Assembly: GCA_002269645.1 (NCBI GenBank)
Contig: NIVC01000690.1
Location: 248,001 to 312,000, forward strand
Reading direction: 5' to 3'
DNA length: 64,000 bases
DNA from: Macrostomum lignano
Taxonomy: Eukaryota
Shown here piece after piece: positions 482 to 52,260 of the stretch (position 1 is its first letter; each line of letters starts with the position of its first letter). The notes below the pieces were generated by a model, which worked only from the letters and a program-made list of their open reading frames with translations, was not told the DNA's origin and did no database searches. Both the position numbers and the translations under genes were made by a program.

Positions 482-619
<138 letters not shown>

Positions 620-10973: not shown

Positions 10974-17006
<6,033 letters not shown>

Positions 17007-26887: not shown

Positions 26888-29800
26888 GTTATACCCTCTC
26901 TTATGATGTTACTCGTATATTTCAATCTAAGCCACTGATGACAATTCGCTGTATCATCTATCGTTTTGATCTATTATATTAACTGATCGTTTTTCGTCGC
27001 TACTAAAAAATATAATAAACTTGGCCAACTAAGCAAGCGAAAATATATCAGTTTAATTGCATATTGGACTGCGCTACTACTTGCATTTTTCTGTTCTCTG
27101 TTTCAACTGTTTGGTCTTGTTCTGCCAAGGACTGCTACGCTGCGCCAGATTAAATTCGTCTCATTTAAATAAAGGTCCCACCAAGACACTGAATTAATTA
27201 AGTTAACAATCCCAACTGGTTTATTACTGCATCTGGATTCTGCACTTCAAGGGCTACATCTACTCTACATTCTACAATATTGGTTTGGCTATTATCGGAA
27301 TTGACAACTGTTTAATTTGTCTTATTCAACTGAGTCTGCGATTGCATCTGTTCTACAGCTTGGCATCAGGTCTACACTAGGCCTACAGCTTGGCACCTAG
27401 GTCTACAACTTGGCATAAGATCAATCAAATCTATTTCCAGGTAAGCCCCTTTTTGCCTGCTACTAGGGACCGTCTGGCAGATTAGCCTTGCTTGTGGGTT
27501 GCATGCTTGTTCTAGAATTAGGATTTAGGCTATTTTTGGGGTTTTCTTAATTTCTCTGCCAGAAATTTCTTTTTTTGTATTTGTGTGCTTTTATATCTGC
27601 TTTCTTCATTTTCCTCTGCATCACTCTCTGTCTTGAGCATTATGTCAACTGAGGCTGGGGAGGAGGCTCTTAGTGCAGCTGATGATAGGGCCACACGAGC
27701 TCCAGGAGAAGTGAAATCTGGCGAATCAATGTCGGATTCACATGATTCACATGTGGGCCTAAATACAGATGAATCATCACATTCAACAAACCTCTTACTT
27801 GAAAATACACTAGCTTCTCTGCACCGCATGCTAGAGGACCACTAAGCAGTAAAGGAGCAGCAAGGTCAACTGGATAGTGCCCAACATTGTGTTGCTCCTA
27901 TGGCTAGTATGGTTCGGTTGTGGCCACCACCACCTTATTCAGCCAATATGAAGTTTGATGTTTTTTTGGCATACTAATTAGCTGCCCATCAGGTACCTCC
28001 TGAACAACAGTCAGCCATCTTACTTTCCCTCTTGTCGCCAGTGTCAAGAATTTTTCCTCAATATTGAGCTTGATAAAAAGGCATGTTCAAAGGCGCTTTA
28101 GGCACTGCGCAACCGCTATACTGATGTTAACCTTCAACAGAAAAGTTATATGGAGCTTGTAGCAGCCGTCCAAAATAGTACAGAGACTATCTTAGACTTC
28201 TATGACCGTCTAGTATCTTATTCTCACTCAGCAGGCATGTCAGTAAACCAGGCTGAGCCGCTGCTAAAAGCCAGGTTCTGTCATGGGCTGCGAAACAAGG
28301 CATTGGCCGAGAGACTGATTCTGTGGAGTCAAGAAACACTTGGAGTCTCCTCAGCTGATCTAGTCCAAAAAGCTAAAGGTATGGTGGGGGTGCAGGAGTT
28401 GTTGCATTCATTTCCAGCACCAACAGCAGGTGCAACTGCTAACTTCCGATCAGTTGACCCAGCTAAGGATGCTTTAGAGGCCAGGGTAGCTGAACTTGAA
28501 AACATATTGCATCAACAGCAGCAGGTCAGGAGTCACCAACAGGATTACCCACCGCCGACATTCCCAGCGGCCCTGACTTCAACCGCTGTAGGAATTGGTA
28601 ATCCAGCTTTTGTCAGGCAGGTGAACCAACAATCTAACCCTATGCAAAGCCAAAACCCCCATCTGCAAAGCCAAGAGCGTGCCACCGCTGCGGGAACACT
28701 GATCACCTGGTCGCTGACTGCCCATGTCCGCCAGCGAATCAGAACAGTGCCAGGAGGCCAAAAGTGGGCCAACATTCTATTAGTACCACATCAGAATTTG
28801 GGAGAATTGTTTCTTGGAATCAGAAATACGGGTTTATCCAGTTAGAACAACTACCAGAGAAGCTGTTTGTCCATCATAGCCAACTTTCGGGCTTGCTGCA
28901 CCAACTGGCAGAGCACCGCCAGATCATTGGCACTAGGGTGCAGTTCCGAAGTCAGGTTGCTCCAGGTCGTGAACATGACCAGGCCTGTTCTGTCACGCAG
29001 TGTCAGGATACTTCACAAGTGCAGTGTAGTCAGGTAAATCCAGTTGAGGACCAATCTTTCGAGTCTAGTTACTTTGTGCAGTTGGTAATCGGGGAGAGTA
29101 AAATAATGGCTTGTCTAGGCTCTGGCGCCAACGCGAGTGTTATAAGCCAGCAGGTGATGGAGCGCCTTGTCTCTGCGGATCCAATTAATAATATCTTCAC
29201 TTCAAGCCGAAAAAATACTACTGCCACAGCATTCAATGGCTCAACAACTCAGATACTGGGAGCGCTGAGGTGTGAAGTAACACTAGGGAAGCTAAGCAAG
29301 ACTCATGTCTTCCTTGTCACCCAAGAGTCGACAGCAGAGGATCTGCTCGAAATCGACTTCCTTCGAAGTTTCCAGGTTGTGATTGACTTCACCGAAGGCA
29401 GAGCCCTTGTTGCAGGTGAAGCTGTCCCACTAGTTGAAGGGGACAAGGGTATCTTCCGTCTCCGCCGTGTGGTAGCTGGGTGCACCACAGAATTACCACC
29501 ACAATCCGAAACTTTAGTACCAAGTCGGGTTTTATACAATGCTCCAAATTTTCAAGGAATCATTCAATGCAAAATCTTCAACACCGACACCGAGTGCCTA
29601 GTAGCCCGCTCTGTCGACATGTCAAACCAGTCAAACCATGTGCTGGTCCGATTACTTAACAGTAGTGACCGGCCAACCCAGATTGAGCGCGGACAGGAAA
29701 TAGTATCGTTCCAGGAACTAGGCCAAGAGTAGTACAAACAACACTCAATGAACAAGACTTCTCTATTGACAACGTTGACAATTTAAATAGCAAGATAGCT

Positions 29801-30312: not shown

Positions 30313-31029
30313 TGTTCCTGTGCAGCTTATTTAGAAATTCCCCAGAGACCGTTTTTGCTCTTCCACTGCCGGCAAGACCTGCAAAGATTTGCCAATATAT
30401 ACCAAATAATTTTAAATCCCCAAATACTACAAATAGTGCTTACCTGCTTTGTGCTCTAAAGTTAGCACTAAAAAATAAATTTTAGAAATTTTTACTAGAA
30501 AAATGTCGAAATTACCCACTTATCAAAAATCGGCGGGCTCAACTGAGCCACCCAGCAAGCGCGCAAACAATCGTCAGTCCTCGGACTGGACTACTAAAAG
30601 TAGTGCTGCTGGCGGATCCTCTACGGCAATATCGAATGGTAGAGGCACAACAAGCCGTACGTCAGTGCCCCCGGCCCAAAGACGGCGCTCGTCCGCTGGT
30701 CCATCCAGCAAAACAACGCCGCCCATTGCACCATGCACATTAACACCAGGGTCGGACCACTCGTCGGCACCGAACTCTCCTGTGCTCACCAATCCAGCCG
30801 ATAGCGTACAACCGGAGGTTATTGAAATCCCGGCTGACTCTGACTCTAGCGGTACCAACACGGTTCTTTGAGGAGCCGGACCAGGTCACTGAGGACCAAG
30901 GCTCTGCAGAATCGGACGCTTCCAACAGTAACGACGCCGCTGATGATGTCGATGCGGACTCAGTGAGGTACCTCCAGAGTCCCATCGGCTTCCCTGTGCA
31001 CCCGGACCGAATCGGGGAAAATATCCAGC

Positions 31030-31570
31030 GCTACGGCGACGTCGTACTGGAGTACTATCCGAAGCTACTTGAATCTGTATCCAAACAGCTCTATGGCCGC
31101 CTAATAGCTGACCTACTGCCAAAGGCCGTCAGGCATCGGCCGCACAAGCAACGTAGGGTGGTATGGTACGGCCCCAGCTACTCGTACTCGGGCGTACCAT
31201 TAGAGCCCAACTAAAAGTGGCACCCGGCTGTCGAGGACCTGTGAGATTTCCTGGAGATCAACGCGGACCTCGGCATGCCAAAGTTTAATTCGTGCCTTAT
31301 AAATTTCTACGAATCAGCGGATGATAATATCCCGTACCACGCTGACAATGAGCCCGAGCTTGGCACCGATCCGTACATCGCCACAGTGTCGCTCGGGGCG
31401 GTACGAAACTTCCTGGTCCGGCAAAACAGTGACCACTGCATAATCGCGCGCTTTAGCACCGAGCCCGGCTCTGTCATCGTGATGGCTGGCGGGTGTCAGC
31501 GCAGGTGCCAGCACAGCGTCCCGTCTGTGGGCATGCAGGAGGGGGTGCGTATTTCACTCACCTTTCGAGT
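31030..31570 (+). pseudogene. AlkB (ALKBH2/3-like) 2OG-Fe(II) dioxygenase domain in LINE-A ORF1
   Basis: VVWYGPSYSYSG, NSCLINFY, YHAD (HxD), VSLG, QHSV (H), RISLTFR (R-x5-R); two in-frame stops at 31212 and 31242. Confidence 0.9.
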
Positions 31571-34500
31571 GACTCATCCACCTGGCAATGCCACGGCGGG
31601 GCGCGGAGGCCCAACAAGATCAGCAGCTGCACTCGTCGGTGATGAGCCTGGCAGTGGCCGGGCGGACGCCAGCCTGGCCGCGCCGGGCTCCCGGACAGCA
31701 GCAGCGAATGGGCAGCCAGGTGATCGTGGAGCCGCCGGAGCGTCCGGCTCTGCGGTCCCAGGCGGCTCTCGAGCCCAGGGCAACGACGGCGGCAACGTCG
31801 GCGGTGCAGGGCGGGGCGGCAGCCACCGCTCCTATGCTACCATGGCGGCTAGTCAGGATGTATCACGGCCACCTAACAATAACAGTGGGAATAGCAACGT
31901 GGTACCCGTAGTATTCAACACTGCGGCTGAAGCCAGCCAGATTGATTTTTTAAAGTGGCTCGCGGCCAACTTTCAAGGTTCGGCCCGGGCCACACTTACC
32001 AAAAAGTTAAATAATGAAGTCGGTTTCCTTGTCTTTCCGGCCACTCCGCGAGACCACCAGATTTTTCTACGTGGGCCTCTGCGTGAGCCCCAGTTCGTAG
32101 GGGGCCGGTTACAAGGCGGCTTCCGCGAGCGAGACCTGACCCACGAGCGAGGCAGACCGCGCCGCAGCGACCAGTGACCCAGGCGGTCCACTCTTTCGTC
32201 TTGCGCGGTGTGCCACCCGAGGTCAGAGCCGACGACTTTAAGCGGCACTTGCAAGACAATGCTGGTTTAAGAATCGTGTCTGCTAGTCGGATTATCGCTA
32301 AAAGAAACAACGAGCCCACCAACCTGGTGCGAGTATTCGGTTATAACAAACAAACAGAAGACGCCTGCCTTGCAACAGGCATTATAACAGATTTCACTAC
32401 CTATCAATGTGAACCAAGCAAGACTGCAACTCCTGCTCGCGCACCGCAGTGCCAAAATTGCCAGCGATTCGGCCATCACGCCCAGCGATGCAAGGCGGCA
32501 AAGCGTTGTAGAATTTGCGCGACCGAGCACCACTGGCGCGACTGCGACAATCAGGAGGCTGTAAAGTGCGCAAACTGCGGTGAGCCGCACCGTGCCAATT
32601 ATCGCAACTGCCAGGTGGCGGTCGACTGACATAGCGCGGCCCAAAGGCGTGCGGCTGCCTACGCAGCGGGCGCCCAAGAAGCCGCGGCAGCTACAGGCAG
32701 GTTGACCGCTCCACCACCTATTGCGGCAGCAGCGGCAGCAGCAGCAGCGGCGCTCCCCGCCCCCGCACTGAGACCAGCACCGGCGGCAGCATCGAGATCG
32801 GCCGACGCCGCAGCACGGGCGCCAATGGCGACAGGAGGCGATGACGATTCATCATGGCTCACCGACCCCGGCCTCCCTAGCCGAAAGCGCCCTGTGCGCG
32901 AATCGACCGACTCGGAGACACAGACAACTGCGCCGAATATGACATCTAACTATGATACGCCGCCAAATGCCAGAGGAGACTCTCAGCTTCAGGGACTGGT
33001 GAGTGGGTTCCTTCCCCTCCTGGTCCAGGCACTTGTTGAGGTGCTGACGCCCTCTGGCAGAGCCCGGCCGAACGGCCGCCTAATACTGAAAGCTCCCGTC
33101 AAACGGTGCAAGACGTAGTAGGTAGGGTTCTGGCCCGGGTCCTCGAAGGCGGGTCGGACAGTCACCAAGGCCTTGGTCAGCTGCTTGGCGCCTCCCGGCG
33201 ACAGGCGGGTGGCCAGACCTAGAATAATATAGGATAAATATGTTCGGTAATAACGGCACGATAGCTCAAACCCCACTGCCTCAGGGCTTAAGATCGGCCA
33301 CCTAAATTGCAGGGGGGTAGTACCGAAACTAAAAGAACTCAGGCTCTGGGTCTCAGACCAGAAGTTGGATATAGCGCTGTTTTCTGAGACCATCCTGAAA
33401 AATACTCATGTATGCACTTTCTCGAGCTATGCTGCAGTGCATCCTTCCGAGTGCAGACCTTCCGAATACGAAGCGCGGACTTCTCCTCGTACACACCCCA
33501 CGGGTAAAGGCAGCAGACGTCCAGCTCTCGTATGACAACGTCAACCATGAGGTCCTTACCTGCACGGTCACTCCTATTGACGGCGCGTGCCCAGCCTTCC
33601 AACTCTCCCTGGTGTATCGGTCCCCGTCGCCGGACAACCTTGACACAGGTCTATTGACTCGGCTGTCCTCGGCGAAGTACTCGCTTATTATGGGAGACCT
33701 GAATGCCAGGCACAGTTTCTTGGGGGGCGAAAGTCGCAACAACAGGGCAGGACAGCAGCTTCATGATTGGCTCGGTGGCGACCCGTCAAAACGCCCTACC
33801 GTCCTCAACCAACCAGGCCAGTTTACCAGAATAGCCCACCGGCAAGGCGTTGTGTCCCGGAATGTGCTGGATCTTGGATTAGCCTCTGGTGACCTCGTCT
33901 CCAACGTGCAAGACTTTGAAGTGGGCTCGGACCTGGATAGTGATTATCTCCCAATAATACTCACCCTGGCGAGTAACTCCCCAGATTGGCAAGGGCCGGA
34001 GAAGGCTCGAAACTTCGCCAAAGCCAACTGGGAACAGTTCCAAAACTCCTTGATGGAAAAACTGATACATGCGTGGCCTCCAGACCTGAACACCAGGCAG
34101 CAGATTGATGCGGAGGTTGAAGTCATCACGAACGCAATTCAGAAAACCATTAAGGAGAATGTCCCGGTCAGAAAAGGCCGTAGAGCCCTCCCCCAAAGGA
34201 TCATCGACATGATCAAGGAGAGGAGGAAGCTCCGGCGTCAATATCATAGTACTAAGGTTGACAATTTTAGGCTCCTCGCGAATAGGAAAGCGAAGGAAAT
34301 AAAAAGCGCAATTCATTCGTTTGAGCAGGGCCAATTTACCTAACTGTGCGAGAAAATAGTTGAAAAAAGTCAGTGCCGGAACGTCAAGGACTTCTGGCAG
34401 GACACAAAAAAATTTATGGGGCGCAACAAGGGCACCACTATCCCGTCCTTGAACGATGGCGCCACCCTCGCACATACTGACTCGGACAAAGCTGATATGC

Positions 34501-34745
34501 TAGCGAGAGCACTAGATGTCAAAATGCGCCCGATTCCATCAACCGACGAGGATCTGAAGAAGCGGGTTGAGCAGGTCATGAAGCTCCCCATCTTTAGACC
34601 AGTTCCTTCGGGCGTAGATCCGTACATGGGCCACCCCCCTGGAGGCTCCGTTCTCTGTCGCAGACACCCTCTGGGAGCTGGACCACCTAAAAGTTGATAG
34701 TGCTCCGGGCCTAGACAAAGTTCCGAACTGCGTCCTTAAACATGG

Positions 34746-35647
34746 TGTAGTGACTGGCTGCTAACTGGTTATTCAGCAGCATTCACTAGCTTTCCCTAAG
34801 AGTGCTGTGATCCGCTGCACAGTAGCTCAGTCCACCTGATCTAGTGAGAGAGTTACCCTGTGCTGGGCCTATGTGTTTACTGCCCAATGACTCATCGCCT
34901 GAGCGGGCGCGGGCAGCCACACTCAATGTCTTCCCACTCGCGCTGAGGAGGCGTTGCAGGATGACTCATCACCTGCGCGGAGTGTAAGGGCTGCCTAGAG
35001 GGAGTAAACAGGATGACTCATCCGCCCACGATTCTATTTTTAGCACAGACTAAGCACGTGACTGTGCACGCACTCTGTGCGTGGCCACTGACCTTGAGTC
35101 ACGCCACTGCTGCGTGACAGGGTTGCCTTATTGGGAAGTTGGCCTTGGATCACGCGTCGCCCGCATGATTCCAATGCCCAAATAAGGAAGTTTCACGCGC
35201 TCACCGCATGAAACTCACGTGACTTTTGGGGGTCCGCTCGGCTATAAATACGGAGCATCTGCGAGCCATTTTTCTCCAGATCGCGTCGTCCTGCCTGGGC
35301 TCGACCGGAGCTGCCTCCATGCCTCCGAGGTCTCCTCTCTCATTTCAGGTTTTCAGGTTCGAGCAGCATTCTACTAAGACGATCGACTGTCGAGACATTT
35401 TTCAGATTTGCCTTTGCTCCGAGCGACTTTGTTATTTTTCTTTCAGGTGACGGATAGACAACTCTGCCGACGCGTCAAGTCCGCACACCAAGGTGGCAGC
35501 AACCCTACCAAGTCACGGCAACGTTTTAGGTTCATTTTCAGGAAAATCGATGGGTAGTACTACGGTGCTATCTAGCTTCTTCAGGAGCAGCGGGTTTTAT
35601 TTTTCTAGGAACATCTTAGAGAACCCGAGAAGGAGAGGCACTTTACA
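34746..35647 (+). mobile_element. Solo LTR inserted in LINE-A ORF2
   Basis: TGTA...TACA ends and 4-bp TSD ATGG (34742-45 / 35648-51). Excision restores VLKHG-LAPIAVTRITKLFNDC in frame. TATA (ctataaata) near 35242 suggests + orientation. Confidence 0.88.
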
Positions 35648-37609
35648 ATGGCCTGGCGCCCATTGCGGTTACCCGCATCACCAAACTCTTCAATGATTGC
35701 TATCGTACGGGCATCTTCCCATCGTAGTGGAAAAAAGCGGTGGTGACGATGATCCCTAAACCAGACAAACCTCCTGAATCCCCGGGATCCTATCGGCCCA
35801 TCAGCCTGACCTCCTGTCTCGGCAAGGTCTTTGAGAAGCTATTGGTGAGGAGGCTGATGAAGCATCTTGAGGGCCAGGGTATCCTCGGCGCGGATCAATG
35901 TGCGTACCGGAAGGTCCACTCAACTTATGATAATCTTGTCTCGTCCAGGACGGCATTCTGAGCCCCTTCCTGTACCTGCTCTTTGTCAGCACCATGCCTC
36001 GGCCAAGACAACCAAACCTTAAGCGAAGCCAATTTGCCGATGACATGGCCATCTGGGCCTCGGCGGACTCCTTTGCTGGCCTCAAGACACTCCTGCAACC
36101 CTACCTTGACCGCGTGTGGAATTGGTGTGGGGGGCAGGGGATTAAGATCAACGCCAGCAAGAGTCAGGTTATCGCATTCAATTATAAGCCAACCCAGCGG
36201 CTCGACCTTCGCCCCAAGCTGAAACTTGGTGGCACGAGCCTTGAATACCAAGAAGAGGTCCGGTTCCTAGGCATGAACCTGGACTACAGGCTGACCCTTA
36301 ACTCGCATGTTGAAAGAGTAGTCAGCCATGGCCGGGCGCTTGCTCTGTCCATTAACCGCATTGCTAAGCTGACCCGGCTAAGCAGCAATACCCTCAAAGT
36401 GCTATACAGGGCTTATGTTGAGAGTGCGCTGACTTACGGTGCCCCGGTGCTGAATATCATAGCACCCAGTAATCTCAATAAGCTCCAGAAAATCCAAAAT
36501 TTAGCTCTCAGGATCTGCTATGGTGCCCCCAGTTACACCCAGGTAGCCTACTTGCATGAGCTGGCAGCCATGCCTATGGTGGCAGACAGGATTCGTGCCC
36601 TGGGCGTAGGCTGGCTCTTCAAGGTGAAGGCTGCTGGGCACCACGACTTCCACATAGAGCCGGAACTCGCTAGAGCTGCCCGTAACCGCCCCCCCCCCAG
36701 TGCTGAACCTGCTTTGGGAAAGCCTGAAGAGGAGGCGAGCAAATAGAAAGGCAGCTGCAAATGCGGCGGCCCGCGCGGCCCAAAACCCGCCCTAAACATG
36801 CTAGGTCAGCTGCCCAAAAACCTAGTGCGCACCCAGATAGTGGCTTCCCCTCTTTTTTACCCTCGATCTAGCTGTCTGTCAGCGCACAAACAAAAGGACC
36901 AATATAAATAATAGGCGTTGAATGTAACGGCGAGTGCTGGACCAGGCGGGTGGGCCTACGACCCCGTAATTATACAGTATATGTAGTTGTGCCTACCTGC
37001 AAGATCTAAAAATGCTGTGATCCGCCGTCGTCCTTCTTGCTCCTGAGTCCGCCTTTTTTATCCTCCTCTTTTACAATCCAACTGTTTTTAAAACTGCAAC
37101 TGCTCTCTTTTACATCCGGCTTTTGACCTGTTTTTACACAATATCCTAATAACCTTTTACCCAATATAGCAAGAATGCTTTTATTTACCACTTTTTAACA
37201 AAACGCGCCAACCTGGTTGCTTTAATTTATTACGTGCAGAAGTTGCTACTTGTAGTGGCTCTAGCCGCATTGCTACTATATTTTCCTTTTTATTTCCAAA
37301 ATTAACTTTATATACTTTTATTCTAAATATCGCGTTGATTCCCATCATGGTCCATATAGCTTTGTGAGGACCCGCCCCTCATTTTTATAGATTCTCCCCC
37401 TACTTATCAGTCGCGACCTTTTTCTTTTTTCTTTTATTCCTAAATGTAAATATCAATAATTTATACAAATACGTTTATACAAAGGGCTCGCCCATAGGGG
37501 CCAGGTCCCTTGTTTTTACCAAATTCTTCGACACACCATACTTAATTAAACCTTCGTTATCGTAAAGGTGTTAGAAAATCAATTGCAGCCAGACAAGCTC
37601 AAGGGCGGA

Positions 37610-38811
37610 TACATTCACTCACAGTAGTCAATAACCTTCGTTTGCCCATTACTTATAAACTGAACTGAACTTGGGAAAGCAACCGGCTGCAACCGGCTGA
37701 TTCGGCTCGCGCGATATCTGCAATCCGGCGCCAGGCTCGCTTGTCTCATAGATTCCTAGGTGTGGTTTAGAATTAAGGCCTTCTCTTGTATTTTCTAGTT
37801 ATATTACTACTATCAGTAGGCTAATTTACATTTACATTTTTTATTAAGTTTTAAGTTTTAAAGTTTCAAAGTTTTAAATAAGCCTAACGTTTTAAGGCTA
37901 AAATGCAGATGGAAGTAGAAGTTAGTAGTAAGAGAAGCGCAAGCTCTAGAAACACTGACTCGCCGCCAGTCAACACAAAGAAGGCCAACTGTCGAACATC
38001 GTCCGGCCCTGACCGACGACCTTGTCTTGCATCTAGCAATGAGCCGTCCTGCATTCAGCAGCAATCAGTAACTGAAGAGCCTCCTGCGGTCAACACCCAG
38101 GCAAGTGAGGGTAGGAGGGGTAGCTCTAGAGCAGACTCAACTGCAGTGTACCTACTGTCTAAACCTGATCTCACGGAAGACAAAGTCACTCAGCCACTAA
38201 CAAATTGCAAAATAAGATATATTCCGAACGCATTAAAAACAAGCGAAGCAAGACTCACCAAAATCCTAATAGACGAAGTTTTTCCAAAGGCCTTTCATTA
38301 TGTATCCGGCGGCAAACCTGAAGCTAGGAAGGTAGTGTGGTACGGTCCAGAGTACACCTACGGTGGCACAACGATTGAGGCCAACGATGCTTGGCACCCC
38401 GTAGTGACTCACTTAGCTTCCTGGCTGCACGTTGAGCTTAAGCTTCCATTGCCAAACTCGTGCCTGATCAACTTCTACAAGGATGGCACAGTTTCAATAC
38501 CGTGGCACTCCGATGACGAGCCTGAGTTAGGCATTGACCCGACCATAGTGTCGGCTTCTTTAGGAGCACAGAGGGATTTCCAACTCAGAACCAAAGGCGC
38601 AAGTCAGAATATTGTGCAATCGCAGAAACTTGCTTTTGTCTCACTGTCATGAGCGGAGCTACCCAAAGGCTCCTGCAACACGCAATTATCAGAGACACTA
38701 AGGTCAAGGACTTTAGGATCAATTTAACATATAGAATAACCAAAGACAGCAGAATCAACGACTCACCTATGCCTGCGCCGAATCCCTGCGTCCGACCTCC
38801 GAAGTCGAAAG
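37610..38811 (+). mobile_element. 5' fragment of a second AlkB-ORF1 element (LINE-B), truncated by Helitron sequence
   Basis: AT-rich leader; ORF 37903-38652 plus a 1-nt frameshift into 38649. Same layout as LINE-A ORF1: S/T/P-rich N-terminus, then AlkB (VVWYGPEYTYGG, NSCLINFY, WHSD, SLG, QHAI, RINLTYR). Downstream domains are absent, so LINE identity is inferred. Confidence 0.65.
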
Positions 38812-39015
38812 AGCTGCTTGACCTTTGCAAAAAAGCATGTTTTTCGAATATCTAATCCCTTTAGCATCGAGAGATTTCTTAGCCACGTTGCATGTACCGT
38901 CACGGAAAAACTTCTGATCGAACAGTGCAAGTTCGAAGAAAATCGTTTCAGCCGTTTTTGCTAAAATCGGTCACATAAATAGATATCTACCGACAGACCA
39001 TTTTTAGTATATGGA
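38812..39015 (-). mobile_element. Helitron 5'-terminal fragment
   Basis: Conserved subterminal core (ttgacctttgcaaaaaagcatg...aaatcg...acagaccatttttagtatatgga); the minus strand begins TCCATATACTA. Confidence 0.8.
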
Positions 39016-40964
39016 CTAGCAGTCAACGCCCCCCGCTGGGGAGCAAAAGAAATGCAATACAGGTTTTTTAATAAGCAACATGTAGCTAAGCCTTGAAATC
39101 TTAAAAAATCTCCTGTCAAACTTCTAACCACAACCCCAACCCTAACCATAACCCTAAATTTAATATTTTGTTCACGAGTTTTTGCATGATGCTTGCATTA
39201 TTTTTTTCATGACGCTTCCATAAACATTTTTAATAGGCTACATGAGCTAAGTTATAAGCTATCCTAACCCTAGCCATAAGCCAAATCTTAACGCTATACC
39301 CTGAACCTAACACTAAACCTTGAAACCCTAACACTAACCCTGCAGCCTGACTTTTGCACAAGTTTGTGAAGCGCTTATGCACCAAGTTTTTGTGAACAGA
39401 ATATTCTCAGTGACATGAAATATTTGAAGCTTTATTTATTTCCGCCATAGCAAATCACTACAAAAAACGTGGATATACGCGTACCATTTAATACTTGCAT
39501 ACTTTAAGTGTAGGATGATACAAAACTGCGTGAATAAATTCGCCGAACTATTAAACATTTCTGTTAGTTTCACGATTATTATAAACAGTACATGCACAAA
39601 GTAGCAGTACTGTTCAACTGTACTGTTACGAGCTACAACAAACAAAAAACAACAAACGGTACGAACTTATAATTAAATTTTAAACAACCGAAAATTGACA
39701 TTTAGCAGTTAAAACAATATTTAAACCAACACATGTATTTATTCAAATGATACGATATGATCTTCTGCTGCTAAGACGAGCGTAGCAGATAAAAACGTGC
39801 AATAATGTAATAATTTATAACAAAAGGATCGACTGTCGCTTCAGCAGATGGTGCCATCGACAAGCAGCCAGTATAGCTTTAGCAGTACAAAAATGTACAT
39901 GTATATGCCATCCTGACTACCTGCCGACTCGCGTCACTGCTCAATTGCATGCATTGGGTGTAAGCAAAGGTAGACATTCATTCTCAAACCAAACATTAAG
40001 TCGCTCCGCTCTGCTTAAGGCTGCTACAGAGCTTGACTGCAAATGCTCCTTTTAGAGTCTGGAACCACAGGGTATATAGAGCAGCTCCTATACACCATTC
40101 ACAAACTCTTTTAGCCCAGTTAAGATGCAGTCAACCTACTCTCAATGAGGGCTGCTTTATAAATTCCAATTATACATACATGTTTCACCTGCTTATATAT
40201 ACCTGTACTATTATCTGTTTACTGACTGTATTTTATGGTCTGTTCAGCGACTGTATTAGTGACTGTATTATTGTCTGTTAGAGACTGTATTGTCTGTTTA
40301 GAGGCTGTATTGTCTGTTTAGAGGCTGTACTAGCGGTACCCCCACCCTTCGGGTGTTCCCATCCATCTAAATTCCATCAGGCCAAATTCACACACATTGC
40401 AACTCCTTGCCATGGACGTTGAAATCAGCAAAAAAAATTTCATTTTGCTGATGTCAATTAAATCAAGACCTACGTTGTTCAACTTTCTAGAAAGATTTAT
40501 TATCTCTATCGTTATTGTACCCAATTTTCCTATTGGTTACAATGCAGGGGATTCATCCATCCCCTCTCCTACTCATCCATCCCCTCTCCCATCCATCCAT
40601 CCATCCTCCTCCCACTCTCACCCATCCCATCTCCCTCTTTATCCCACCGTTTCATTCATCCCCTCTCCCTCTTATCCCCCTCTCAGCCATCCCGTCTCTC
40701 CCTTATCAATGCAATTTTCATTGGCCATCGCGTCAGTTGCCCGTAATTGCAGGTGTAACAGGAAAAAACAACTCTCAGTGCCTCTATTATCTTCTCTCCC
40801 TCTTTTCTCCACGACTTCTTGTCTCGGTTGTCCTTCTGTGCGTCTTCTCTCTTAGAATTTCAGCACGCAGCTGAAAATGCGTGAAGAAATAAGAACGAAA
40901 TAAAATATTTTTCCAATTCTCTCATTTGTGTATTTTTCAATTCTCATTCTCCCATTCTCTCTCA

Positions 40965-41700: not shown

Positions 41701-42252
41701 ATGTCTCAGCAACCGACAAATAGGCCGGATAGCTACCCCGAGATGTTTGAGAAGCAACGACGAGGAATGGAACAACACATGAAGACCTTCATGGAGAAAG
41801 CTTCGAACATCGTCCGTCATCAGGAGACGATAGCCCAACAAGAATCCGACAGGAAATCTGCCCTGGCTGAGCTGGTTGCACAGCAGCAATGCGAAATCGC
41901 GCAGCTACGAAGAACGGTTTCTGAACTGCGGGACGAGCTCACCATCGTACAAGCTGAGCGAGACGAGCTTGCGACTGTGCGGAAGGAGCTGGCAACCGTG
42001 CGTGACGAACGCGACCACCTGGAGTCCGTGCTTGGACGGCAGCTTGAAGAGAGCTGCCCTGAGGATGAGTCCTCTCCCCGCAAGCGAGCCCGACATAGCG
42101 AGGATGCGGACCCGGCTGCATCAACTGAGACGTCAACAGCCGAGCCACTGGACGGAACAGAGGTGCAAGAACAGATCGCGAATGCAAGCCAAACCTCCGT
42201 GATGTCTCTGGACGAGTCCGGCTCTGCGGGAAGGTCTTCAATGGACAGTTAG
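41701..42252 (+). CDS. Orphan intronless 183-aa predicted coiled-coil protein with NLS-like PRKRAR
   Basis: ATG-to-stop ORF, GC-rich relative to flanks, heptad-like E/Q/R/L pattern, TATA-like gctatatatt ~120 nt upstream. Confidence 0.55.
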   Translation: MSQQPTNRPDSYPEMFEKQRRGMEQHMKTFMEKASNIVRHQETIAQQESDRKSALAELVAQQQCEIAQLRRTVSELRDELTIVQAERDELATVRKELATVRDERDHLESVLGRQLEESCPEDESSPRKRARHSEDADPAASTETSTAEPLDGTEVQEQIANASQTSVMSLDESGSAGRSSMDS

Positions 42253-43579
42253 AGGTGTTGCCACACTGCGTAAAACAGAATGCAAAAAAATGCTACTGAA
42301 CCACTTGTATGAGTCTCGTGCATGGTAGATCCCATCCGAGGAAGCTACTTTATTGACTGATGGCATAGTAAGTTTCCCAAAATTGTAGTTAATTAATACA
42401 TACTATAGTATAGTTTGTTATACACGCAATGATACATCTTGCAGCGGATCACTTATTACACCACTACTATTTTTTTACGACAATGACAGTGACAAAAAAA
42501 ACAAATTCACCTACGGTATTAGGATACGGACTCAGATCTGTTGTGCTTCTTTATCGAGGCGAGGATAGCCTGCTATGCTGTTTAATTGCTGCGTTAAGTA
42601 ATACTTCTCGTGTTTGTTATTCTTTCCTGACATATTTGTATGAAATGACTCTGTGTGCATGGAATAGTATATGCGAACGGATTTAACATCCCATTGACGA
42701 ATTTTCCCACAGAATTTAACTGTGCGCAGTTTTACATGCCAATTTCGATGCATGGACGGATGGCAAAATGAAAAAAATATATGGAAAGCGCCAATGAAGT
42801 GACCATTTGGTAAACTTACATTATCCATATGACAGTGGGATAAATGTGAGATAGAGAGGGAGATGGGATGGGTGAGAGTGGGAGGAGGATGGATGGATGG
42901 ATGGGAGAGGGGATGGATGAGTAGGAGAGGGGATGGATGAATCCCCTGCATTGTAACCAATAGGAAAATTGGGTACAATAACGATAGAGATAATAAATCT
43001 TTCTAGAAAGTTGAACAACGTAGGTCTTGATTTAATTGACATCAGCAAAATGAAATTTTTTTTGCTGATTTCAACGTCCATGGCAAGGAGTTGCAATGTG
43101 TGTGAATTTGGCCTGATGGAATTTAGATGGATGGGAACACCCGAAGGGTGGGGGTACCGCTAGTATTATATATATACTATTTTACGACAAATACCAGAAA
43201 AGCGTATATATTTAGCTTTGTTAGAAATTTGGTGATTACATTTTTTACATGAAGCAAATTTTTACATGTGTATGTATCAATTTCGCTAGTGCAAAAATAA
43301 GCTACGCTGTATAATGCAATGTTTTTCCTGCATGGCTTTCATTATGCGGTGATCAAGGCATTCATTCAGATGGTGAACGAAACTTTGCAGAAGTTAATAA
43401 AATTGCACACGATGAACAGATAAGTGTATGGATAACAGTGCAGTATTGCAGTAAGGAGGCAAACAATTTTTTTAACAGCGTTCCTAACAAATACAAGCCG
43501 TTAGTATGCCAGGAAATGCAAAATCGATAATGTCTTTGTCGCATCAATGTAAACTAATGTATAGCACGACAAGAAATTC

Positions 43580-44170
43580 CTATGAGAGAACAGGCTTCAG
43601 AACGACATTCCGAGTCTTGTTGTCAGGAGCCAATACGCGAATGTTTTTGGGATCACGGGCTCTGCTCAAGGCAACATACAATTGTCCATGCTGAAAGCAA
43701 GAGAGAATCAAATGTACACCAAAAAAGTCCAGAGTCTGGCCTTGGCTCTTGTGGACCGTGATAGCAAAACAAGGACGAACAGGAAACTGGAGCCGTCGAA
43801 ATACAATCGGTAAGTCAGCCGTACTTGGCTCCAATGGAATGCGTGGCAAAAACACCTGTTCACCTTTGTACGCTCCAGTTGCAATCCTCGCGACCAGTAC
43901 ATTGGGCTCCAGTTTGGTCACGATCAGTCGGCTGCCGTTGCACAGGCGAGGCGGGTGCAGATTCCGCAGCAGCATCACCGGCATACCCACCTTGAGTCGA
44001 AGCAGATGTTGCGGCAGTCCAGGAGGATCCAGGCTGTTGAGAGACTCCACGGGAAACTGGGTAGCCGCATCTTCATCATTCGGGATGGAGTCGAACGACC
44101 GGTACTCGACCCCTTCGCCAGGGAAGAGCTCCAGGCAGGCAGCGTTGATTTAAAGTTGAGCGTTGAGGTA
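43580..44170 (-). pseudogene. Helitron PIF1-family helicase C-terminal half
   Basis: LKVGMPVMLLRNL, LCNGSRL, LPRIPL, RLQFPVRPCFAITVHKSQGQTL, HGQLYVALSR. Confidence 0.93.
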
Positions 44171-47175: not shown

Positions 47176-47415
47176 TTGTCTGTTTAGAGACTGTATTGTC
47201 TGTTTAGAGACTGTATTGTCTGTTTAGAGACTGTATTGTCTGTTTAGAGACTTTATTGCCTGTTTAGAGACTGTATTGCCTGTTTAGAGACTGTTTAAAT
47301 ATTGATTTCCAAAAAATAGATTAACTGAACACCCGTCTAACCTAGTAACCTTCTAACAAACTTTATTATACGAGTTACGAGTAATAATCAACTAAATTTG
47401 TAAAAAATCACTCAC

Positions 47416-48587
47416 CTTTTTGCCATTTCCGAAGTCCCTCACAATTTCCTTCGAGTGTTTGTCATAAAACTCAAACAAGGCAGCAGGCTCCCGAATGGTG
47501 GTCACACTTTCGTCTCCAATCTCATCAGCACCAAGTCCTTGAGTAGGCACTGGAGCGGGCACAGGTTCAAACCGGGTATCGCCTTCCTTTGCATTTCTAT
47601 ACCAGTCAGCCAAGACTCTGGCTTCACCATCGTCACTGTTGCATTTTACGTCAGAGTTCGAGCATCCCAACGTGACGGAGCCCGAATACTCCTGCAACTT
47701 TGCCCTTCTTATGGACAAAACATCGCCGATGTTCCACCTGTCCACTTGAGCTGAGGACGAACCCCAAAACGTGCAGCTTACAGAGCCGAAGGTTCGGTCA
47801 ACCAAAGTCACTTTGGCTACGTTAACCTTCTTCCCAGAACGCGTTCGGACTTCTTCAGACGGTTGCCTGGCGTCGATCACTCCAAGCACATAGACGATTC
47901 TGATAGTGAAAGGGGGCAATACTTTTTTTTAACTATTTGCACACTAACTTAAGCATCACATTAGATTTCTAAAGTATTTGTACACTAACAGGAGCATCAT
48001 AAAACTAATAACCCAGGCTTCGTACAGTGTTGCGATGATAAATATTTTCAAACACAAGACAAACTAACTGTCACCCAAAACACTATTACATGTACTTTCA
48101 CTCCGCGATATTTGAGCACTAATACACGACGAAAACTCATTCACCTGTCCAATCCAGTCTGTTGAAGTTGATTAATGCTAGTGTAATTAATTACTGGATC
48201 TCGAGCAACCGGCACTTCGTTGCTTCTATAGATGAAGCCATTTGAATCCACGGAAACGGTCATCTCAAGTGGATTGTCCGTACACTTGTACTCTGGCTTG
48301 GCAGTCTTCACCATCCCGCCGGATATGCGAACAGCTTCAGCATCGTTGCAGACTTCCCAGACACCTTGCAGGTCCTTACCGAAGACGCTGACTCGCATCT
48401 CAGATGAGTCGTCCACCAAGATGAACGAAAAAACTTGGCCCTGACCTTTGTTGTTATTATACGTGTGAACGTCTTTCAGGTTCGTCACAAGGCCAGTGAC
48501 AGGCGTAGGCATTTGACCAGCTGTCAGACCAGCAATCCCATCCTTCTTCGACTTCTTTTTCAAAGGTGACTCTGAATAAGAGGCCAT
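47416..48587 (-). CDS. RPA70-like two-OB-fold ssDNA-binding protein, copy 1 (exons 48587-48145, 47899-47416; last exon probably ~39880-39841)
   Basis: VFSFILVDDSSEMRVSVF (DBD-A like), TLVDRTFGSVSCTFWG, VLSIRRAKLQEYSG and EARVLADWY (DBD-B like); phase-2 GT-AG junction is in frame. Confidence 0.85.
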
Positions 48588-49699
48588 TTTGCACAAAAAA
48601 TATTCAACAATTGAAAAACGAACTGATAAAAAGTATCAATCAAACTTTTTCTAAGCAATGATAAGCTTTGATTTTAAGACAACAAAATTGGCTCAACAAA
48701 TCACAAACTATATATGTAGAAATAAAAGAAGCCACGAAAAAAACACCACCTCCCCTTCAGCCCAGTACATTACTGTGTAAGCTGTACTCAATTTGCATTC
48801 ATTTTTTACACAATCTAATTGGCTGGACACTCCACCCACCCTAATCATTCCCGTGCCCAGCATTAAAGCACACACTGTACCCTCTGCTGTACGTTAAGGT
48901 CTCCTCACTTTTCTCACCTAATCCTTTTGTTTGTTTGCTATCTCGTTTTACGGTGACACAATTCTCACCGACTGACTCAGCAAGTGTAGGTAATACTTTA
49001 GGAGTTCGCGGCCGCGTATACTGCACTGCACAAACAAATAATTGTATGGCGCGGCTGACTGGCTGAGCCATTTTCGCACCTTCTAAGCCGGGAAGGAAAA
49101 ACAGGCGACCCTCAAGTCAGGCTGCATGGCCACCAGTACGCTAGACAATTTGTAGACCAATCGCCGATCTAAAGCCCCGAACTGCACACCCTCGCCTGCA
49201 CAACCGACCAATAGGAAGCCACAGAAAACCACCCTAAGGCTTAGCGAAGCCACACTCTCCACAGCAGACTGATACGACAACTGCTGAAGCGACGACTCAC
49301 AACCCATAACCCCTATTTTATTCGCCCCTACACCTCAGTTTCAGTGCCTATATATACAAAAAATACGCTCATTTAGTATATTAGATATATTTAGACTGCT
49401 AATATATGCATATCACTCAAATATTCGGTGGCAGTCGGCGCGGCGGCGGCGGTAGGCGCGGCGGCGGTCAGCGCGGCAGGGGCGGCCCACGTGGAAAAAC
49501 CAGTGAGTACCATTCCAAGACACTGTAAATCTTGAGCTTTGAGTACATTCGAGTAGTCTTAAATTTTACCTAATTGTAACCAGTTACTGACTTCCATGCT
49601 ATATTATTACTGATAAATTTGCGAAAATTTCCCTCTCTTTCAATTGCCAGTCGTTTGTTTCTTCTGCGGAGGCCGCCACCGCGTTGCCAGCTGCATCGC

Positions 49700-51630: not shown

Positions 51631-52260
51631 TTTTAAAAAGTCTTTTAGTTTTCCTGACGTTGAAAAGCTTTAATTAAAAAAAATTATACTCTATGAAAAT
51701 TCGAACCATCGTCGCTGCTTTAGCAGTTCAGTTTGTTCACCTCTAGGCTAGCTCTCATCTTTTGATAACATCAAATTTTGCACTTAAATAATTCAACACT
51801 TTAAAATCCAAGCATAGAGTAAATCACACGAGGCAGTTATGACATAATCAGTTTCTCAGTCAGTCAGTATCAGTTAACAATATGGTTACGCAATTTAAAT
51901 CAATTCTGGTGCTACGCTTCCACACTGCATTTTCAATTCAAGTCGGAGTTACAATTCAGTTATGATGCAATCTATTTCAGAATCAGAATTCAACCAGTCA
52001 GTTTTTTCTCTAGCATTCTTACAATGCGTTTCAAGTCGAAAAGTTTGCTTGACCTTTGCAAAAAAGCATGTTTTTCGAATATTAAATGCCTTTAGCATCG
52101 AGCAATTTCTTAGCCGCGATGCATGTACAGTCACGGGAAAATTTCTGATCGAACAGTGCAAGTTTGAACAAAATCGGTCCAGCCATTTTTTCTCTAATCA
52201 ATCACATAGATAGATAGATAGACACAGACAGACCATTTTTAGTATATTGGATGGAAAGGA

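What the first reader, a model, noticed from the sequence alone, without database searches (positions are those of the whole stretch)
30503..36746. LINE retrotransposon whose ORF1 carries an AlkB nucleic-acid demethylase (top candidate system)
Seen: ORF1 = disordered N-terminus, an ALKBH2/3-like domain with all Fe/2OG ligands (HAD, H, RISLTFR), an RRM-like region and three CCHC knuckles, followed by a normal APE-RT ORF2. Established: AlkB enzymes oxidatively remove m1A/m3C (some m6A) from ssDNA/RNA, and several plant RNA viruses carry AlkB in their replicases. Usual Jockey/I ORF1 accessory domains are RRM, CCHC, PHD or esterase. Inference: a cis-acting eraser packaged in the RNP that repairs RT-blocking methyl lesions or removes host RNA marks, which would be a retroelement counter-defence. 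I cannot check whether such elements are already catalogued.
Basis: partly seen in the sequence, partly recalled or inferred. Interest (0 to 1): 0.9.

Follow-up and report, generated by a model that had tools for sequence, protein, structure and literature searches.

The report
LINE retrotransposon carrying AlkB demethylase domain
This is a dead copy of a flatworm-type jumping gene (a LINE) whose RNA-coating protein is fused to an ALKBH3-like nucleic-acid demethylase; intact relatives elsewhere keep the enzyme under selection, which suggests these elements clean methyl lesions or marks off their own template before copying it.

Summary
An ALKBH3/ALKBH2-type Fe(II)/2-oxoglutarate dioxygenase domain with intact HxD...H and RxxxxxR motifs lies in one reading frame with the RNA-binding core of a LINE ORF1 (two RRM-like domains and three CCHC knuckles). 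An APE-RT ORF2 follows.

The window copy is dead, however. ORF1 really spans 30503-33222 and has 3 frameshifts and 3 premature stops. ORF2 (33240-36746) has at least 4 frameshifts, 2 stops, a 0.88-kb insertion and an RT-core deletion, so it is not "normal".

The architecture holds at family level. Intact 757-962-aa AlkB-RRM-RRM-CCHC ORF1s, followed by APE or APE-RT ORF2s, occur in at least five diverged lineages (Macrostomum lignano proteins and Logan contigs). AlkB evolves as slowly as the RRM and CCHC domains. The LINE AlkBs cluster apart from the host-type ALKBH3 (37% identity).

A second, different AlkB-LINE fragment lies at 37903-38800. A Penelope-like element elsewhere also has an AlkB ORF1.

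The most likely function is cis-acting removal of m1A/m3C-type, RT-blocking methyl groups from the element's RNA or ssDNA. This is inferred, not shown.

The closest precedents are an orchid Gypsy ALKBH5-like ORF and the AlkB domains of plant RNA viruses. I found no report of a LINE-borne AlkB.

The parts
30503..30871 (+). ORF1 N-terminal S/T/P-rich, probably disordered region (frame 2), from the ATG at 30503; ends at TGA 30869-30871 because of a frameshift at about 30850-30870
   Evidence: Homologues also have variable low-complexity N-termini.
30960..31589 (+). AlkB (ALKBH3/2-like Fe(II)/2OG dioxygenase) domain, frame 0. Carries two in-frame stops (TAA 31212-31214, TGA 31242-31244). HxD lies at about 31338-31346, the second His within 31506-31526, and RISLTFR at 31548-31568.
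31590..31895 (+). G/A/P-rich low-complexity linker, in the same ORF as the AlkB C-terminal half (ORF 31275-32177)
   Evidence: The equivalent stretch in P0008 is predicted disordered, with pLDDT below 50.
31896..32105 (+). First RRM-like domain (NVVPVVF...FLKWLAANFQG...GFLVFPAT...IFLRGPL), frame 0. A frameshift follows between 32105 and 32165.
   Evidence: The P0008 model shows a beta-alpha-beta-beta-alpha-beta topology at residues 314-383 with pLDDT around 90.
32174..32449 (+). Second RRM-like domain (HSFVLRGVP...), frame 2
   Evidence: P0008 model residues 414-489.
32450..32611 (+). Three CCHC-type zinc knuckles (32450-32491, 32507-32545, 32567-32611)
   Evidence: Conserved in P0008, P0009, P0011 and P0012.
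32627..33222 (+). Premature TGA (32627-32629), then the original ORF1 C-terminal region: an A/P-rich stretch and conserved helices (LQGLVSGFLPLLVQALVEVL at 32987-33046). There is a frameshift at about 33050-33100. The natural stop is TAG 33220-33222.
33240..34604 (+). ORF2 start (ATG 33240) and APE endonuclease plus the following region. Frame changes 0 to 2 at about 33280 and 2 to 0 at about 33456. In-frame TAA at 34341-34343.
   Evidence: 35-38% identity to the L001, L002 and L006 ORF2 N-terminal parts
34699..34746 (+). Start of the RT region (SAPGLDKVPNCVLKHG), frame 1
34747..35628 (+). About 0.88 kb that does not align to any related ORF2. It is an insertion, or scrambled sequence, inside the RT. 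No other copy occurs in the window.
35629..36746 (+). Rest of the RT and the ORF2 C-terminus. Frame 1 runs to 35940 (TAG at 35725). About 80 codons are deleted at 35940/35946, which removes the motif-A region. Frame 0 then runs to the TAG stop at 36744-36746. FADD lies at 36033-36044.
37903..38801 (+). Second, different AlkB-LINE: a 5' fragment of an ORF1 (N-terminus plus AlkB). It is 37% identical to element 1's AlkB and 58-64% identical to the M. lignano ORF1 proteins P0152 and P0003. It has a frameshift at about 38640. Homology to P0152 ends at about 38800, where an unrelated dispersed repeat begins.

Best explanation
The feature is a decayed copy of an APE-type LINE. Its ORF1 is of 'type I' (RRM plus CCHC), and it belongs to the Jockey-like group of non-LTR retrotransposons; the exact clade is unresolved.

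Its ORF1 protein has acquired an N-terminal ALKBH3-like Fe(II)/2-oxoglutarate dioxygenase. The domain order is: disordered N-terminus, AlkB, disordered linker, RRM, RRM, three CCHC knuckles, C-terminal helices.

Shown by the data: the fusion, its conservation, and the purifying selection acting on it.

Inferred mechanism: in intact family members ORF1p coats the element's own RNA in cis. The tethered AlkB then oxidatively removes N1-methyladenine / N3-methylcytosine-type methyl groups. These disrupt Watson-Crick pairing and stall reverse transcriptases. The substrate would be the RNA template, and possibly also the single-stranded DNA of the target-primed reverse-transcription intermediate. 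The effect would be to raise the yield of full-length cDNA. This is analogous to the RNA-repairing AlkB domains of plant flexiviruses.
For: Domain identity:
- ALKBH3 E 3e-25 by sequence.
- The AF2 model of the intact homologue P0008 has pLDDT above 90 over the AlkB domain.
- Foldseek best matches are human ALKBH3 bound to ssDNA/3mC (E 9e-18, TM 0.86-0.89, rmsd 1.9-2.4 A), then ALKBH2. ALKBH5, ALKBH6 and E. coli AlkB are 8-9 orders of magnitude weaker.

Catalytic residues:
- In the alignment of ten homologues the HxD, second His and RxxLTFR columns are invariant or at least 90% conserved.
- They are also present in the decayed window copy.

Fusion and LINE context:
- Single ORFs of 757-962 aa hold AlkB, two RRM-like domains and CCHC knuckles (P0008, P0009, P0011, P0012).
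- An APE ORF2 follows ORF1 after 0-1 nt in L001 and L002. A complete APE+RT ORF2 (Pfam Exo_endo_phos_2 + RVT_1) follows after about 430 nt in L006.
- The window's ORF2 is 35-38% identical to these.

Selection:
- AlkB dN is 0.23 and 0.30 in two pairs. This equals the RRM and CCHC domains (0.18-0.39) and is well below the linkers and termini (0.46-0.72). dS is saturated.

Origin:
- The LINE AlkBs form one NJ clade that excludes the host-type ALKBH3. Identity to the host type is 37%.

Established knowledge:
- AlkB, ALKBH2 and ALKBH3 remove m1A/m3C from DNA and RNA.
- Viral AlkB domains repair RNA and prefer RNA substrates (PMC2553587).
- AlkB treatment is a routine laboratory means of removing RT-blocking m1A/m3C before cDNA synthesis (my own knowledge; such use appears in PMC12140624).
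Against: - No enzymatic, expression or retrotransposition data exist. Substrate (RNA or ssDNA; m1A/m3C or other) is inferred only from the nearest solved relatives at about 32% identity.
- The window copy itself is non-functional.
- Bootstrap support for a single LINE-AlkB clade is only 50/100.
- dS is saturated, so dN/dS values are bounds rather than estimates.
- It is not known that m1A/m3C occur on LINE RNA at levels that limit retrotransposition.
- The host appears to have its own ALKBH3-like gene (P0159), so the need for an element-borne copy is unexplained except by cis-tethering.
Confidence: 0.5

Rival explanations
1. Epitranscriptomic eraser or counter-defence. The AlkB domain removes a regulatory mark deposited by the host (m6A, or enzymatically written m1A) from the element's RNA. 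This would let the RNA escape reader-mediated decay, sequestration or silencing. It would not be repairing chemical damage.
For: The orchid Ty3/Gypsy-encoded AlkB is a demonstrated m6A ssRNA demethylase (PMC9289625). m6A affects L1 and ERV RNA fate in mammals (PMC7873242; discussed in PMC9289625). Cis-tethering to ORF1p would suit either function.
Against: By sequence and predicted fold the domain groups with ALKBH3 and ALKBH2, not with the m6A erasers. ALKBH5 matches at E 1.8e-8 and rmsd about 8 A, against 9e-18 and about 2 A for ALKBH3. In mammals m6A promotes L1 (PMC7873242), so the direction of benefit is not general. There are no data here on m6A or m1A in flatworm TE RNA.
Confidence: 0.2
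2. DNA-directed function. The AlkB acts on single-stranded DNA at the integration site or on the nascent cDNA, as ALKBH3 does on ssDNA. It would repair alkylated bases, or remove DNA methyl marks that impede second-strand synthesis or mark new insertions.
For: The best structural matches are ALKBH3-ssDNA and ALKBH2-dsDNA complexes. CCHC and RRM ORF1 proteins chaperone both RNA and cDNA (reviewed in PMC4120745).
Against: ORF1p is principally an RNA-coating protein. Nothing in the sequence discriminates DNA from RNA preference. Viral AlkB domains with a similar evolutionary logic prefer RNA (PMC2553587).
Confidence: 0.15
3. Not a real fusion. On this view the AlkB segment is a processed pseudogene of a host ALKBH gene, a nested insertion, or an assembly chimera lying in the 5' part of a LINE.
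For: The window copy is broken into several frames, so taken alone it could not exclude this.
Against: ORF 31275-32177 spans AlkB, the linker and RRM1 without interruption. Intact single ORFs with the same order occur in at least 5 lineages from independent assemblies. Identity to the host-type ALKBH3 is only 37%. Purifying selection acts on AlkB. Catalytic residues are invariant.
Confidence: 0.02
4. The AlkB domain has been co-opted as a non-catalytic nucleic-acid-binding module. Alternatively it acts on another target, such as tRNA (ALKBH3 demethylates tRNA) or a protein, to modulate host translation in favour of the element.
For: ALKBH3 has tRNA substrates (established knowledge, not tested here). 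AlkB folds do bind single-stranded nucleic acids.
Against: Strict conservation of the Fe(II) and 2OG ligands across lineages that share only 25-30% identity argues for retained catalysis. Fusion to a cis-acting RNA-coating protein points to the element's own RNA as the target.
Confidence: 0.08

Closest known systems
Phalaenopsis (orchid) Ty3/Gypsy 'Gypsy_Pa_2799' elements encoding paALKBH5-like (PMC9289625)
   Same: It is a retrotransposon that has captured an AlkB-family 2OG dioxygenase. The catalytic residues are retained. The proposed action is on the element's own RNA.
   Different: That case is an LTR retrotransposon in plants. The domain lies in a separate additional ORF, belongs to the ALKBH5/ALKBH9B/10B (m6A eraser) clade, and is a recent acquisition in one lineage. 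Here the host element is an animal LINE. The domain is ALKBH3/2-like, is fused in frame to the ORF1 RNA-binding core, and is shared by several deeply diverged lineages.
AlkB domains in the replicases of plant positive-strand RNA viruses (Flexiviridae and others; PMC2553587, PMC544882)
   Same: An AlkB domain is embedded in a protein of a selfish RNA-templated replicator. It is shown to repair m1A/m3C, prefers RNA, and is thought to protect genome integrity. This is the best functional analogy.
   Different: Those are RNA viruses that use an RdRp, and the domain sits inside the replicase polyprotein. Here the element replicates by reverse transcription, and the domain sits on the RNA chaperone/coat protein rather than on the polymerase.
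Type I ORF1p of Jockey-superfamily and other LINEs (at least one RRM immediately upstream of CCHC knuckles; Khazina & Weichenrieder classification as summarised in PMC4120745)
   Same: The C-terminal two thirds of this ORF1 (two RRM-like domains plus three CCHC knuckles), followed by an APE-RT ORF2, fits the type I layout.
   Different: The survey of 448 Jockey-superfamily ORF1s lists RRM, CCHC, PHD, esterase, coiled-coil and CTD domains. It does not mention AlkB or any dioxygenase. The N-terminal AlkB and the conserved C-terminal helices are additions.
Human ALKBH3 (PDB 2iuw, 8jnk, 8jnr, 9ncz)
   Same: It is the best sequence and structure match for the domain, at 32-33% identity and TM 0.86-0.89. 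The same HxD...H and Rx5R motifs are present.
   Different: ALKBH3 is a stand-alone cellular repair enzyme. The element's domain is a distinct, TE-specific clade only 37% identical to the host-type ALKBH3 of M. lignano.
TRAS-family LINEs of Lepidoptera with a virus-derived RNA helicase domain in ORF2 (PMC5563155)
   Same: This is a precedent for a LINE lineage that stably retains an extra nucleic-acid-processing enzyme domain.
   Different: The enzyme differs (helicase), the ORF differs (ORF2), and the host group differs. I took this from the abstract only.

Membership tests
AlkB family, ALKBH2/ALKBH3 subgroup of Fe(II)/2OG dioxygenases | Significant sequence similarity over the whole catalytic domain | tested here: met
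   phmmer against PDB gives ALKBH3 E 3e-25 over query residues 64-208, and ALKBH2 E 1.7e-12. Pfam PF13532 is recorded on the homologues.
AlkB family, ALKBH2/ALKBH3 subgroup of Fe(II)/2OG dioxygenases | Fe(II) ligands HxD...H and 2OG-binding Rx5R | tested here: met
   The window has YHADNE, QHSVP and RISLTFR. These columns are invariant or at least 90% conserved in the 10- and 70-sequence alignments.
AlkB family, ALKBH2/ALKBH3 subgroup of Fe(II)/2OG dioxygenases | Double-stranded beta-helix fold with a nucleotide-recognition lid, closest to ALKBH3/2 rather than ALKBH5 or FTO | tested here: met
   AF2 model of the intact homologue P0008 (pLDDT above 90 over residues 1-225). Foldseek gives ALKBH3 E 9e-18, TM 0.86-0.89; ALKBH2 E 6e-17; ALKBH5 E 1.8e-8. 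Tested on a homologue, not on the broken window copy.
AlkB family, ALKBH2/ALKBH3 subgroup of Fe(II)/2OG dioxygenases | Oxidative demethylase activity on m1A/m3C | not testable with these tools
   Requires a biochemical assay.
APE-type LINE (non-LTR retrotransposon) | ORF2 with an N-terminal apurinic-like endonuclease and a reverse transcriptase | tested here: met
   The window ORF2 pieces align to L006 ORF2 (Pfam Exo_endo_phos_2 + RVT_1) at E 1e-27 to 1e-64. L006 ORF2 hits LINE-1 ORF2p at 4e-18 and R2 at 4e-16 in PDB. The window copy is degraded.
APE-type LINE (non-LTR retrotransposon) | ORF1 upstream of ORF2, same strand, closely spaced, encoding an RNA-binding protein | tested here: met
   In the window the ORF1 stop is at 33222 and the ORF2 ATG at 33240. 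The spacer is 0 nt in L001 and 1 nt in L002.
APE-type LINE (non-LTR retrotransposon) | Multiple dispersed copies or families in a genome | tested here: met
   There are two different AlkB-LINE copies in this window, several M. lignano proteins from different scaffolds, and four families across the SRR316283xx/SRR316284xx Logan runs.
APE-type LINE (non-LTR retrotransposon) | Defined 3' tail and target-site duplication | tested here: inconclusive
   The longest flank match is 10 bp, which is chance level. There is no A-run of 7 or more downstream.
Type I ORF1p (RRM + CCHC) | At least one RRM immediately upstream of CCHC knuckles | tested here: inconclusive
   Three CCHC knuckles are shown by sequence. 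Two domains have canonical beta-alpha-beta-beta-alpha-beta topology at pLDDT around 90 in the P0008 model. No RRM match was obtained by sequence against PDB. The domain-only model failed, with pLDDT 36.
Jockey superfamily / a named LINE clade | Placement of the RT in a reference phylogeny (RTclass1 or Repbase) | not tested
   No reference RT set was available. The only hints are no RNase H and no C-terminal CCHC in L006 ORF2, and the APE's nearest PDB hit being TRAS1 EN at E 0.08.
Processed pseudogene of host ALKBH3 | High identity to the host gene, no in-frame fusion, neutral decay in all copies | tested here: not met
   37% identity to P0159. In-frame fusion. Purifying selection.
Orchid-type AlkB-bearing Ty3/Gypsy elements | LTR retrotransposon backbone; ALKBH5-clade domain in a separate ORF | tested here: not met
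   The backbone is APE-RT LINE. The domain is ALKBH3/2-like. It is fused within ORF1.

The most novel reading that the evidence does not exclude
AlkB capture is a recurrent retroelement strategy in macrostomid-type flatworms. An old LINE clade carries it on ORF1p, and an unrelated retroelement class (Penelope-like elements, RT + GIY-YIG) carries a related AlkB in its upstream ORF. If so, N1-A/N3-C methylation of single-stranded nucleic acid is a significant, previously unrecognised barrier to reverse transcription in vivo, whether it arises as damage or is deposited by a host methyltransferase as a defence. These elements would then encode a dedicated counter-measure.
Probability: 0.3. Interest if true: 0.85.

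Novelty: new variant of a known kind. Interest (0 to 1): 0.7.

Why it matters
LINE ORF1 proteins are regarded as RNA chaperones or coats. Their known accessory domains are RRM, CCHC, coiled coil, CTD, PHD and esterase. A conserved, selected nucleic-acid demethylase fused to ORF1p would be a new enzymatic activity in the LINE ribonucleoprotein.

It would give a direct, testable handle on an open question: do base methylation lesions or marks on retrotransposon RNA or ssDNA limit retrotransposition? The tests are straightforward (an HxD mutant in a reporter assay, and oligonucleotide demethylation assays).

The finding also extends a pattern across kingdoms. Plant RNA viruses, an orchid LTR element, and now animal LINEs and apparently a Penelope-like element have each recruited AlkB enzymes. 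That points to convergent pressure on RNA-templated replicators. A naturally RNA-tethered ALKBH3-like enzyme could also interest those who build RT-based sequencing or writing tools.

Tried and rejected
- Word-indexed protein searches returned only 1-3 hits, probably because low-complexity words filled the candidate list. The exhaustive profile search was what found the family.
I used an alignment of window fragments instead.
- Look-ups of P0001 and P0157 found no contigs. P0157 is an unrelated protist RS-rich AlkB protein.
- A PDB sequence search with the RRM-CCHC part gave only HIV nucleocapsid at E about 0.5.
- A single-sequence AF2 model of that part failed, with pLDDT 36. The RRM assignment therefore rests on the topology in the full-length model.
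- Clade assignment could not be done. APE against PDB gave only TRAS1 EN at E 0.08, and no reference LINE RT set was available.
- The search for target-site duplications and a poly(A) tail found nothing above chance.
- Rfam and tRNA scans of the window found nothing, so the 0.88-kb insert in ORF2 is not a recognisable SINE or tRNA-derived element. It has no other copy in the window.
- I suspected the C-terminus of the PLE-associated AlkB protein P0156 might be esterase-like. A PDB search gave no support, and I dropped the idea.
- The small ORFs between ORF1 and ORF2 in L006 and L010 are not similar to each other, and I treat them as spurious.

Full report
**What is in the window**

The window is eukaryotic and rich in transposable elements. 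It contains a VCP/p97 gene, a Helitron, an LTR-element gag-protease and a Penelope-like element.

Between 30503 and 36746 on the + strand there is a GC-rich block (0.52-0.58, against about 0.40-0.48 around it). Its three-frame translation contains, in order:
- an S/T/P-rich N-terminus starting at the ATG at 30503;
- an AlkB domain;
- a G/A-rich linker;
- two RRM-like regions;
- three Cys/His knuckles;
- an A/P-rich stretch with conserved helices;
- an APE endonuclease and a reverse transcriptase.

The AlkB assignment is not a chance match. phmmer against all PDB sequences gives human ALKBH3 at E 3e-25 and ALKBH2 at 1.7e-12 over the whole catalytic domain. The HxD, second His and RxSLTFR motifs are all present.

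**State of this copy**

ORF1 is split over three frames. Frameshifts lie at about 30860, 32105-32165 and 33050-33100. In-frame stops are TAA 31212, TGA 31242 (both inside AlkB) and TGA 32627, just after the third knuckle. Comparison with intact homologues shows that ORF1 originally continued for about 200 more codons, to a natural TAG at 33220-33222.

ORF2 starts at the ATG at 33240. Compared with an intact relative (L006 ORF2, 948 aa) it shows:
- at least four frame changes;
- stops at 34341 and 35725;
- about 0.88 kb of unalignable sequence at 34747-35628, inside the RT;
- loss of residues 594-673, the region that holds the first catalytic aspartate motif.

One useful fact does survive in this copy. 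A single uninterrupted ORF (31275-32177) runs from the catalytic half of AlkB through the linker into the first RRM-like domain. AlkB and the RNA-binding core are therefore physically fused here.

**Is the architecture real at family level?**

The word-indexed searches were nearly blind. They gave only a Macrostomum lignano fragment (P0001) that begins with the last AlkB strand and continues into the RRM region.

I then ran an exhaustive profile search of 1.84 billion representative proteins, using an alignment of the window's own AlkB and downstream pieces. It found 11 proteins at E below 1e-30 (141-218 bits), clearly above the general AlkB background (115 bits or less).

Several of these are long single ORFs with exactly the proposed order, including three knuckles: P0008 (757 aa), P0009 (962), P0011 (892) and P0012 (843). 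The M. lignano proteins P0152 (861 aa) and P0153 (688 aa) show the same order, though their gene models are incomplete or frameshifted in the knuckle region. UniProt labels the M. lignano proteins only as 'Fe2OG dioxygenase domain-containing protein'.

The contigs that encode them show the LINE context:
- In L001 the ORF1 stop is followed at once by the ATG of an APE ORF2.
- In L002 the spacer is 1 nt.
- L006 is a 9-kb contig with an intact ORF1 and an intact 948-aa ORF2 carrying Pfam Exo_endo_phos_2 and RVT_1.
- L009-L011 show the same arrangement for a fourth family.

The ORF2 N-terminal parts of the three groups (the window; L001/L002; L006/L009) are 35-38% identical (E 1e-44 to 1e-90). This is therefore one old LINE assemblage with AlkB-ORF1 as a shared feature, not a one-off chimera.

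The window also holds a second AlkB-LINE of a different family at 37903-38801. It is 37% identical to the first and 58-64% identical to P0152 and P0003. It is frameshifted at about 38640. Its homology to P0152 stops at about 38800, where an unrelated dispersed repeat begins.

**Selection and origin**

In the alignment of ten homologues that share only about 25-30% identity, the Fe(II) and 2OG ligand columns are invariant or at least 90% conserved.

I computed Nei-Gojobori estimates by domain for two pairs (P0009/P0008 and P0012/P0011). AlkB dN is 0.23 and 0.30. This is the same as the RRM and CCHC domains (0.18-0.39), and a half to a third of the value for the linkers and termini (0.46-0.72). 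dS is saturated (above 1.2), so dN/dS is well below 1 but cannot be stated precisely.

In a neighbour-joining tree of 110 AlkB domains, the ten LINE-borne domains form an exclusive clade. Bootstrap support is only 50/100. The M. lignano host-type ALKBH3 (P0159/P0070) falls outside that clade. The window's AlkB is 37% identical to that host-type protein and 79% identical to a same-family M. lignano fragment, P0002.

**What kind of AlkB, and what does it probably do?**

An AlphaFold2 model of intact P0008, built with a 70-sequence alignment, gives:
- pLDDT above 90 for the AlkB domain (residues 1-225);
- a disordered linker;
- two domains with beta-alpha-beta-beta-alpha-beta topology (314-383 and 414-489; pLDDT around 90);
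- knuckles at moderate confidence;
- two C-terminal helices.

Foldseek against PDB ranks human ALKBH3 bound to ssDNA/3mC first (E 9e-18, TM 0.86-0.89, rmsd 1.9-2.4 A, 32-33% identity). ALKBH2 comes next. ALKBH6, E. coli AlkB and the m6A eraser ALKBH5 are 8-9 orders of magnitude weaker.

Established knowledge is that ALKBH3, ALKBH2 and AlkB remove m1A/m3C from single-stranded DNA and RNA, and that viral AlkB domains repair RNA and prefer it (PMC2553587). These lesions block base pairing and stall reverse transcriptases.

ORF1 proteins bind their own RNA in cis. The most economical mechanism is therefore a tethered demethylase that clears RT-blocking methyl groups from the template, and possibly from the ssDNA intermediates. 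This step is inference. The main rival is erasure of a regulatory mark such as m6A, as shown for the orchid Gypsy AlkB (PMC9289625). It is less favoured because the domain is not of the ALKBH5 or FTO type. A DNA-directed role cannot be excluded.

**Comparison with what is known**

Full-text searches of PMC and bioRxiv found no description of a LINE-encoded AlkB. I combined AlkB, 2OG-Fe, 'AlkB domain' or dioxygenase with ORF1, non-LTR, retrotransposon, zinc knuckle or Penelope-like.

The only retrotransposon case found is the orchid Ty3/Gypsy lineage. There an ALKBH5-like m6A demethylase sits in a separate ORF. A survey of 448 Jockey-superfamily ORF1s lists RRM, CCHC, PHD, esterase, coiled-coil and CTD domains, with no mention of AlkB or any dioxygenase.

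The backbone fits a type I ORF1 plus an APE-RT ORF2 with no RNase H and no C-terminal knuckle. I could not assign the named clade because no reference RT set was available. Repbase and Dfam could not be consulted, so an uncurated or curated entry may exist.

I therefore rate this as a new variant of a known kind: a LINE with a previously undescribed accessory enzyme. There are functional precedents in plant viruses and in one plant LTR element.

**An unexpected extension**

One strong hit, P0156 (1012 aa), has the AlkB domain between different flanking regions. In two independent Logan contigs (L008, L012) it lies 100-380 bp upstream of a 710-aa ORF with RT and GIY-YIG endonuclease motifs. That downstream ORF is a Penelope-like element.

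M. lignano has a homologue (P0158, 1309 aa) that matches P0156 on both sides of AlkB. In the tree P0156 is sister to the LINE AlkB clade, with weak support of 35/100. The window's own Penelope-like element (619-2534) is 31-41% identical to the L008 one, but any upstream ORF would lie beyond the window's left edge.

If this is confirmed, two unrelated retroelement classes in these animals carry AlkB. That would strengthen the case that the activity benefits reverse-transcribing elements.

**Limits**

- The species of the Logan runs is unknown.
- Assigning the window to Macrostomum or a relative rests only on best hits of its transposable-element sequences.
- The element's termini are undefined.
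- The RRM calls rest on predicted topology alone.
- Tree support is modest.
- No functional data exist.

Noticed in passing
window 37903-38801 (+): A second AlkB-bearing LINE ORF1 fragment from a different family. It is 37% identical to element 1's AlkB and 58-64% identical to M. lignano P0152 and P0003. It has an intact 249-aa ORF, then a frameshift at about 38640. Homology ends at about 38800, where a dispersed repeat begins.
   Followed up: yes
L008 2120-7398 and L012 3134-7083; M. lignano protein P0158: A Penelope-like element (RT + GIY-YIG ORF of 710 aa) is preceded by a long ORF that contains a related AlkB domain (P0156/P0010). This suggests AlkB has also been recruited by a second, unrelated retroelement class. 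The C-terminal region of that ORF has no recognisable fold match.
   Followed up: partly
window 619-2534 (+), and a fragment at 63365-63844: Penelope-like element RT plus GIY-YIG endonuclease, 31-41% identical to the L008 PLE. Any upstream ORF1 would lie off the left edge of the window.
   Followed up: partly
window 34747-35628 (+): About 0.88 kb inside the RT of element 1 aligns to no related ORF2. It has no other copy in the window and no Rfam or tRNA match. Its origin is unknown (an insertion or a rearrangement).
   Followed up: partly
window 12447-15880 (-): Exons of a VCP/p97 (CDC48) AAA+ ATPase host gene (E 1e-137 to human p97). At least one intron is filled with CT-rich microsatellite-like repeats that read as long 'CLSV' ORFs.
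   Followed up: partly
window 43580-44050 (-) and 47392-48596 (-): Helitron remnants: a helicase C-terminus matching Helraiser (E 7e-40), and RPA70-like OB-fold ORFs (E 8e-6).
   Followed up: partly
window 28150-29732 (+): Gag-like and aspartic-protease-like ORFs of an LTR retrotransposon lie immediately upstream of the LINE. The LINE may have inserted into it, or next to it.
   Followed up: no
window 40328-40647 and 42846-43165: A 320-bp inverted repeat at 99.4% identity flanks a coiled-coil-like 183-aa ORF (41701-42252) and (TC)n/(CA)n microsatellites. It may be the terminal inverted repeats of a DNA transposon, or a recent inverted duplication.
   Followed up: no
window 38803-39016; copies at 52033-52251, 54982-55146, 62305-62511: A short dispersed repeat of about 210 bp (86-89% identity between copies) begins where element 2's homology to P0152 ends. 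It is probably a MITE/SINE-like element.
   Followed up: no
window 5113-7844 (-): Long low-complexity tracts (S/L/P-rich and N/Q/T-rich 'ORFs') with strong GC skew. They are tandem-repeat DNA rather than genes.
   Followed up: no
ORF1 C-terminus: window 32987-33222; P0008 residues 693-737: A pair of helices at the extreme C-terminus of ORF1, after the knuckles, is conserved across all AlkB-LINE lineages.
   Followed up: partly
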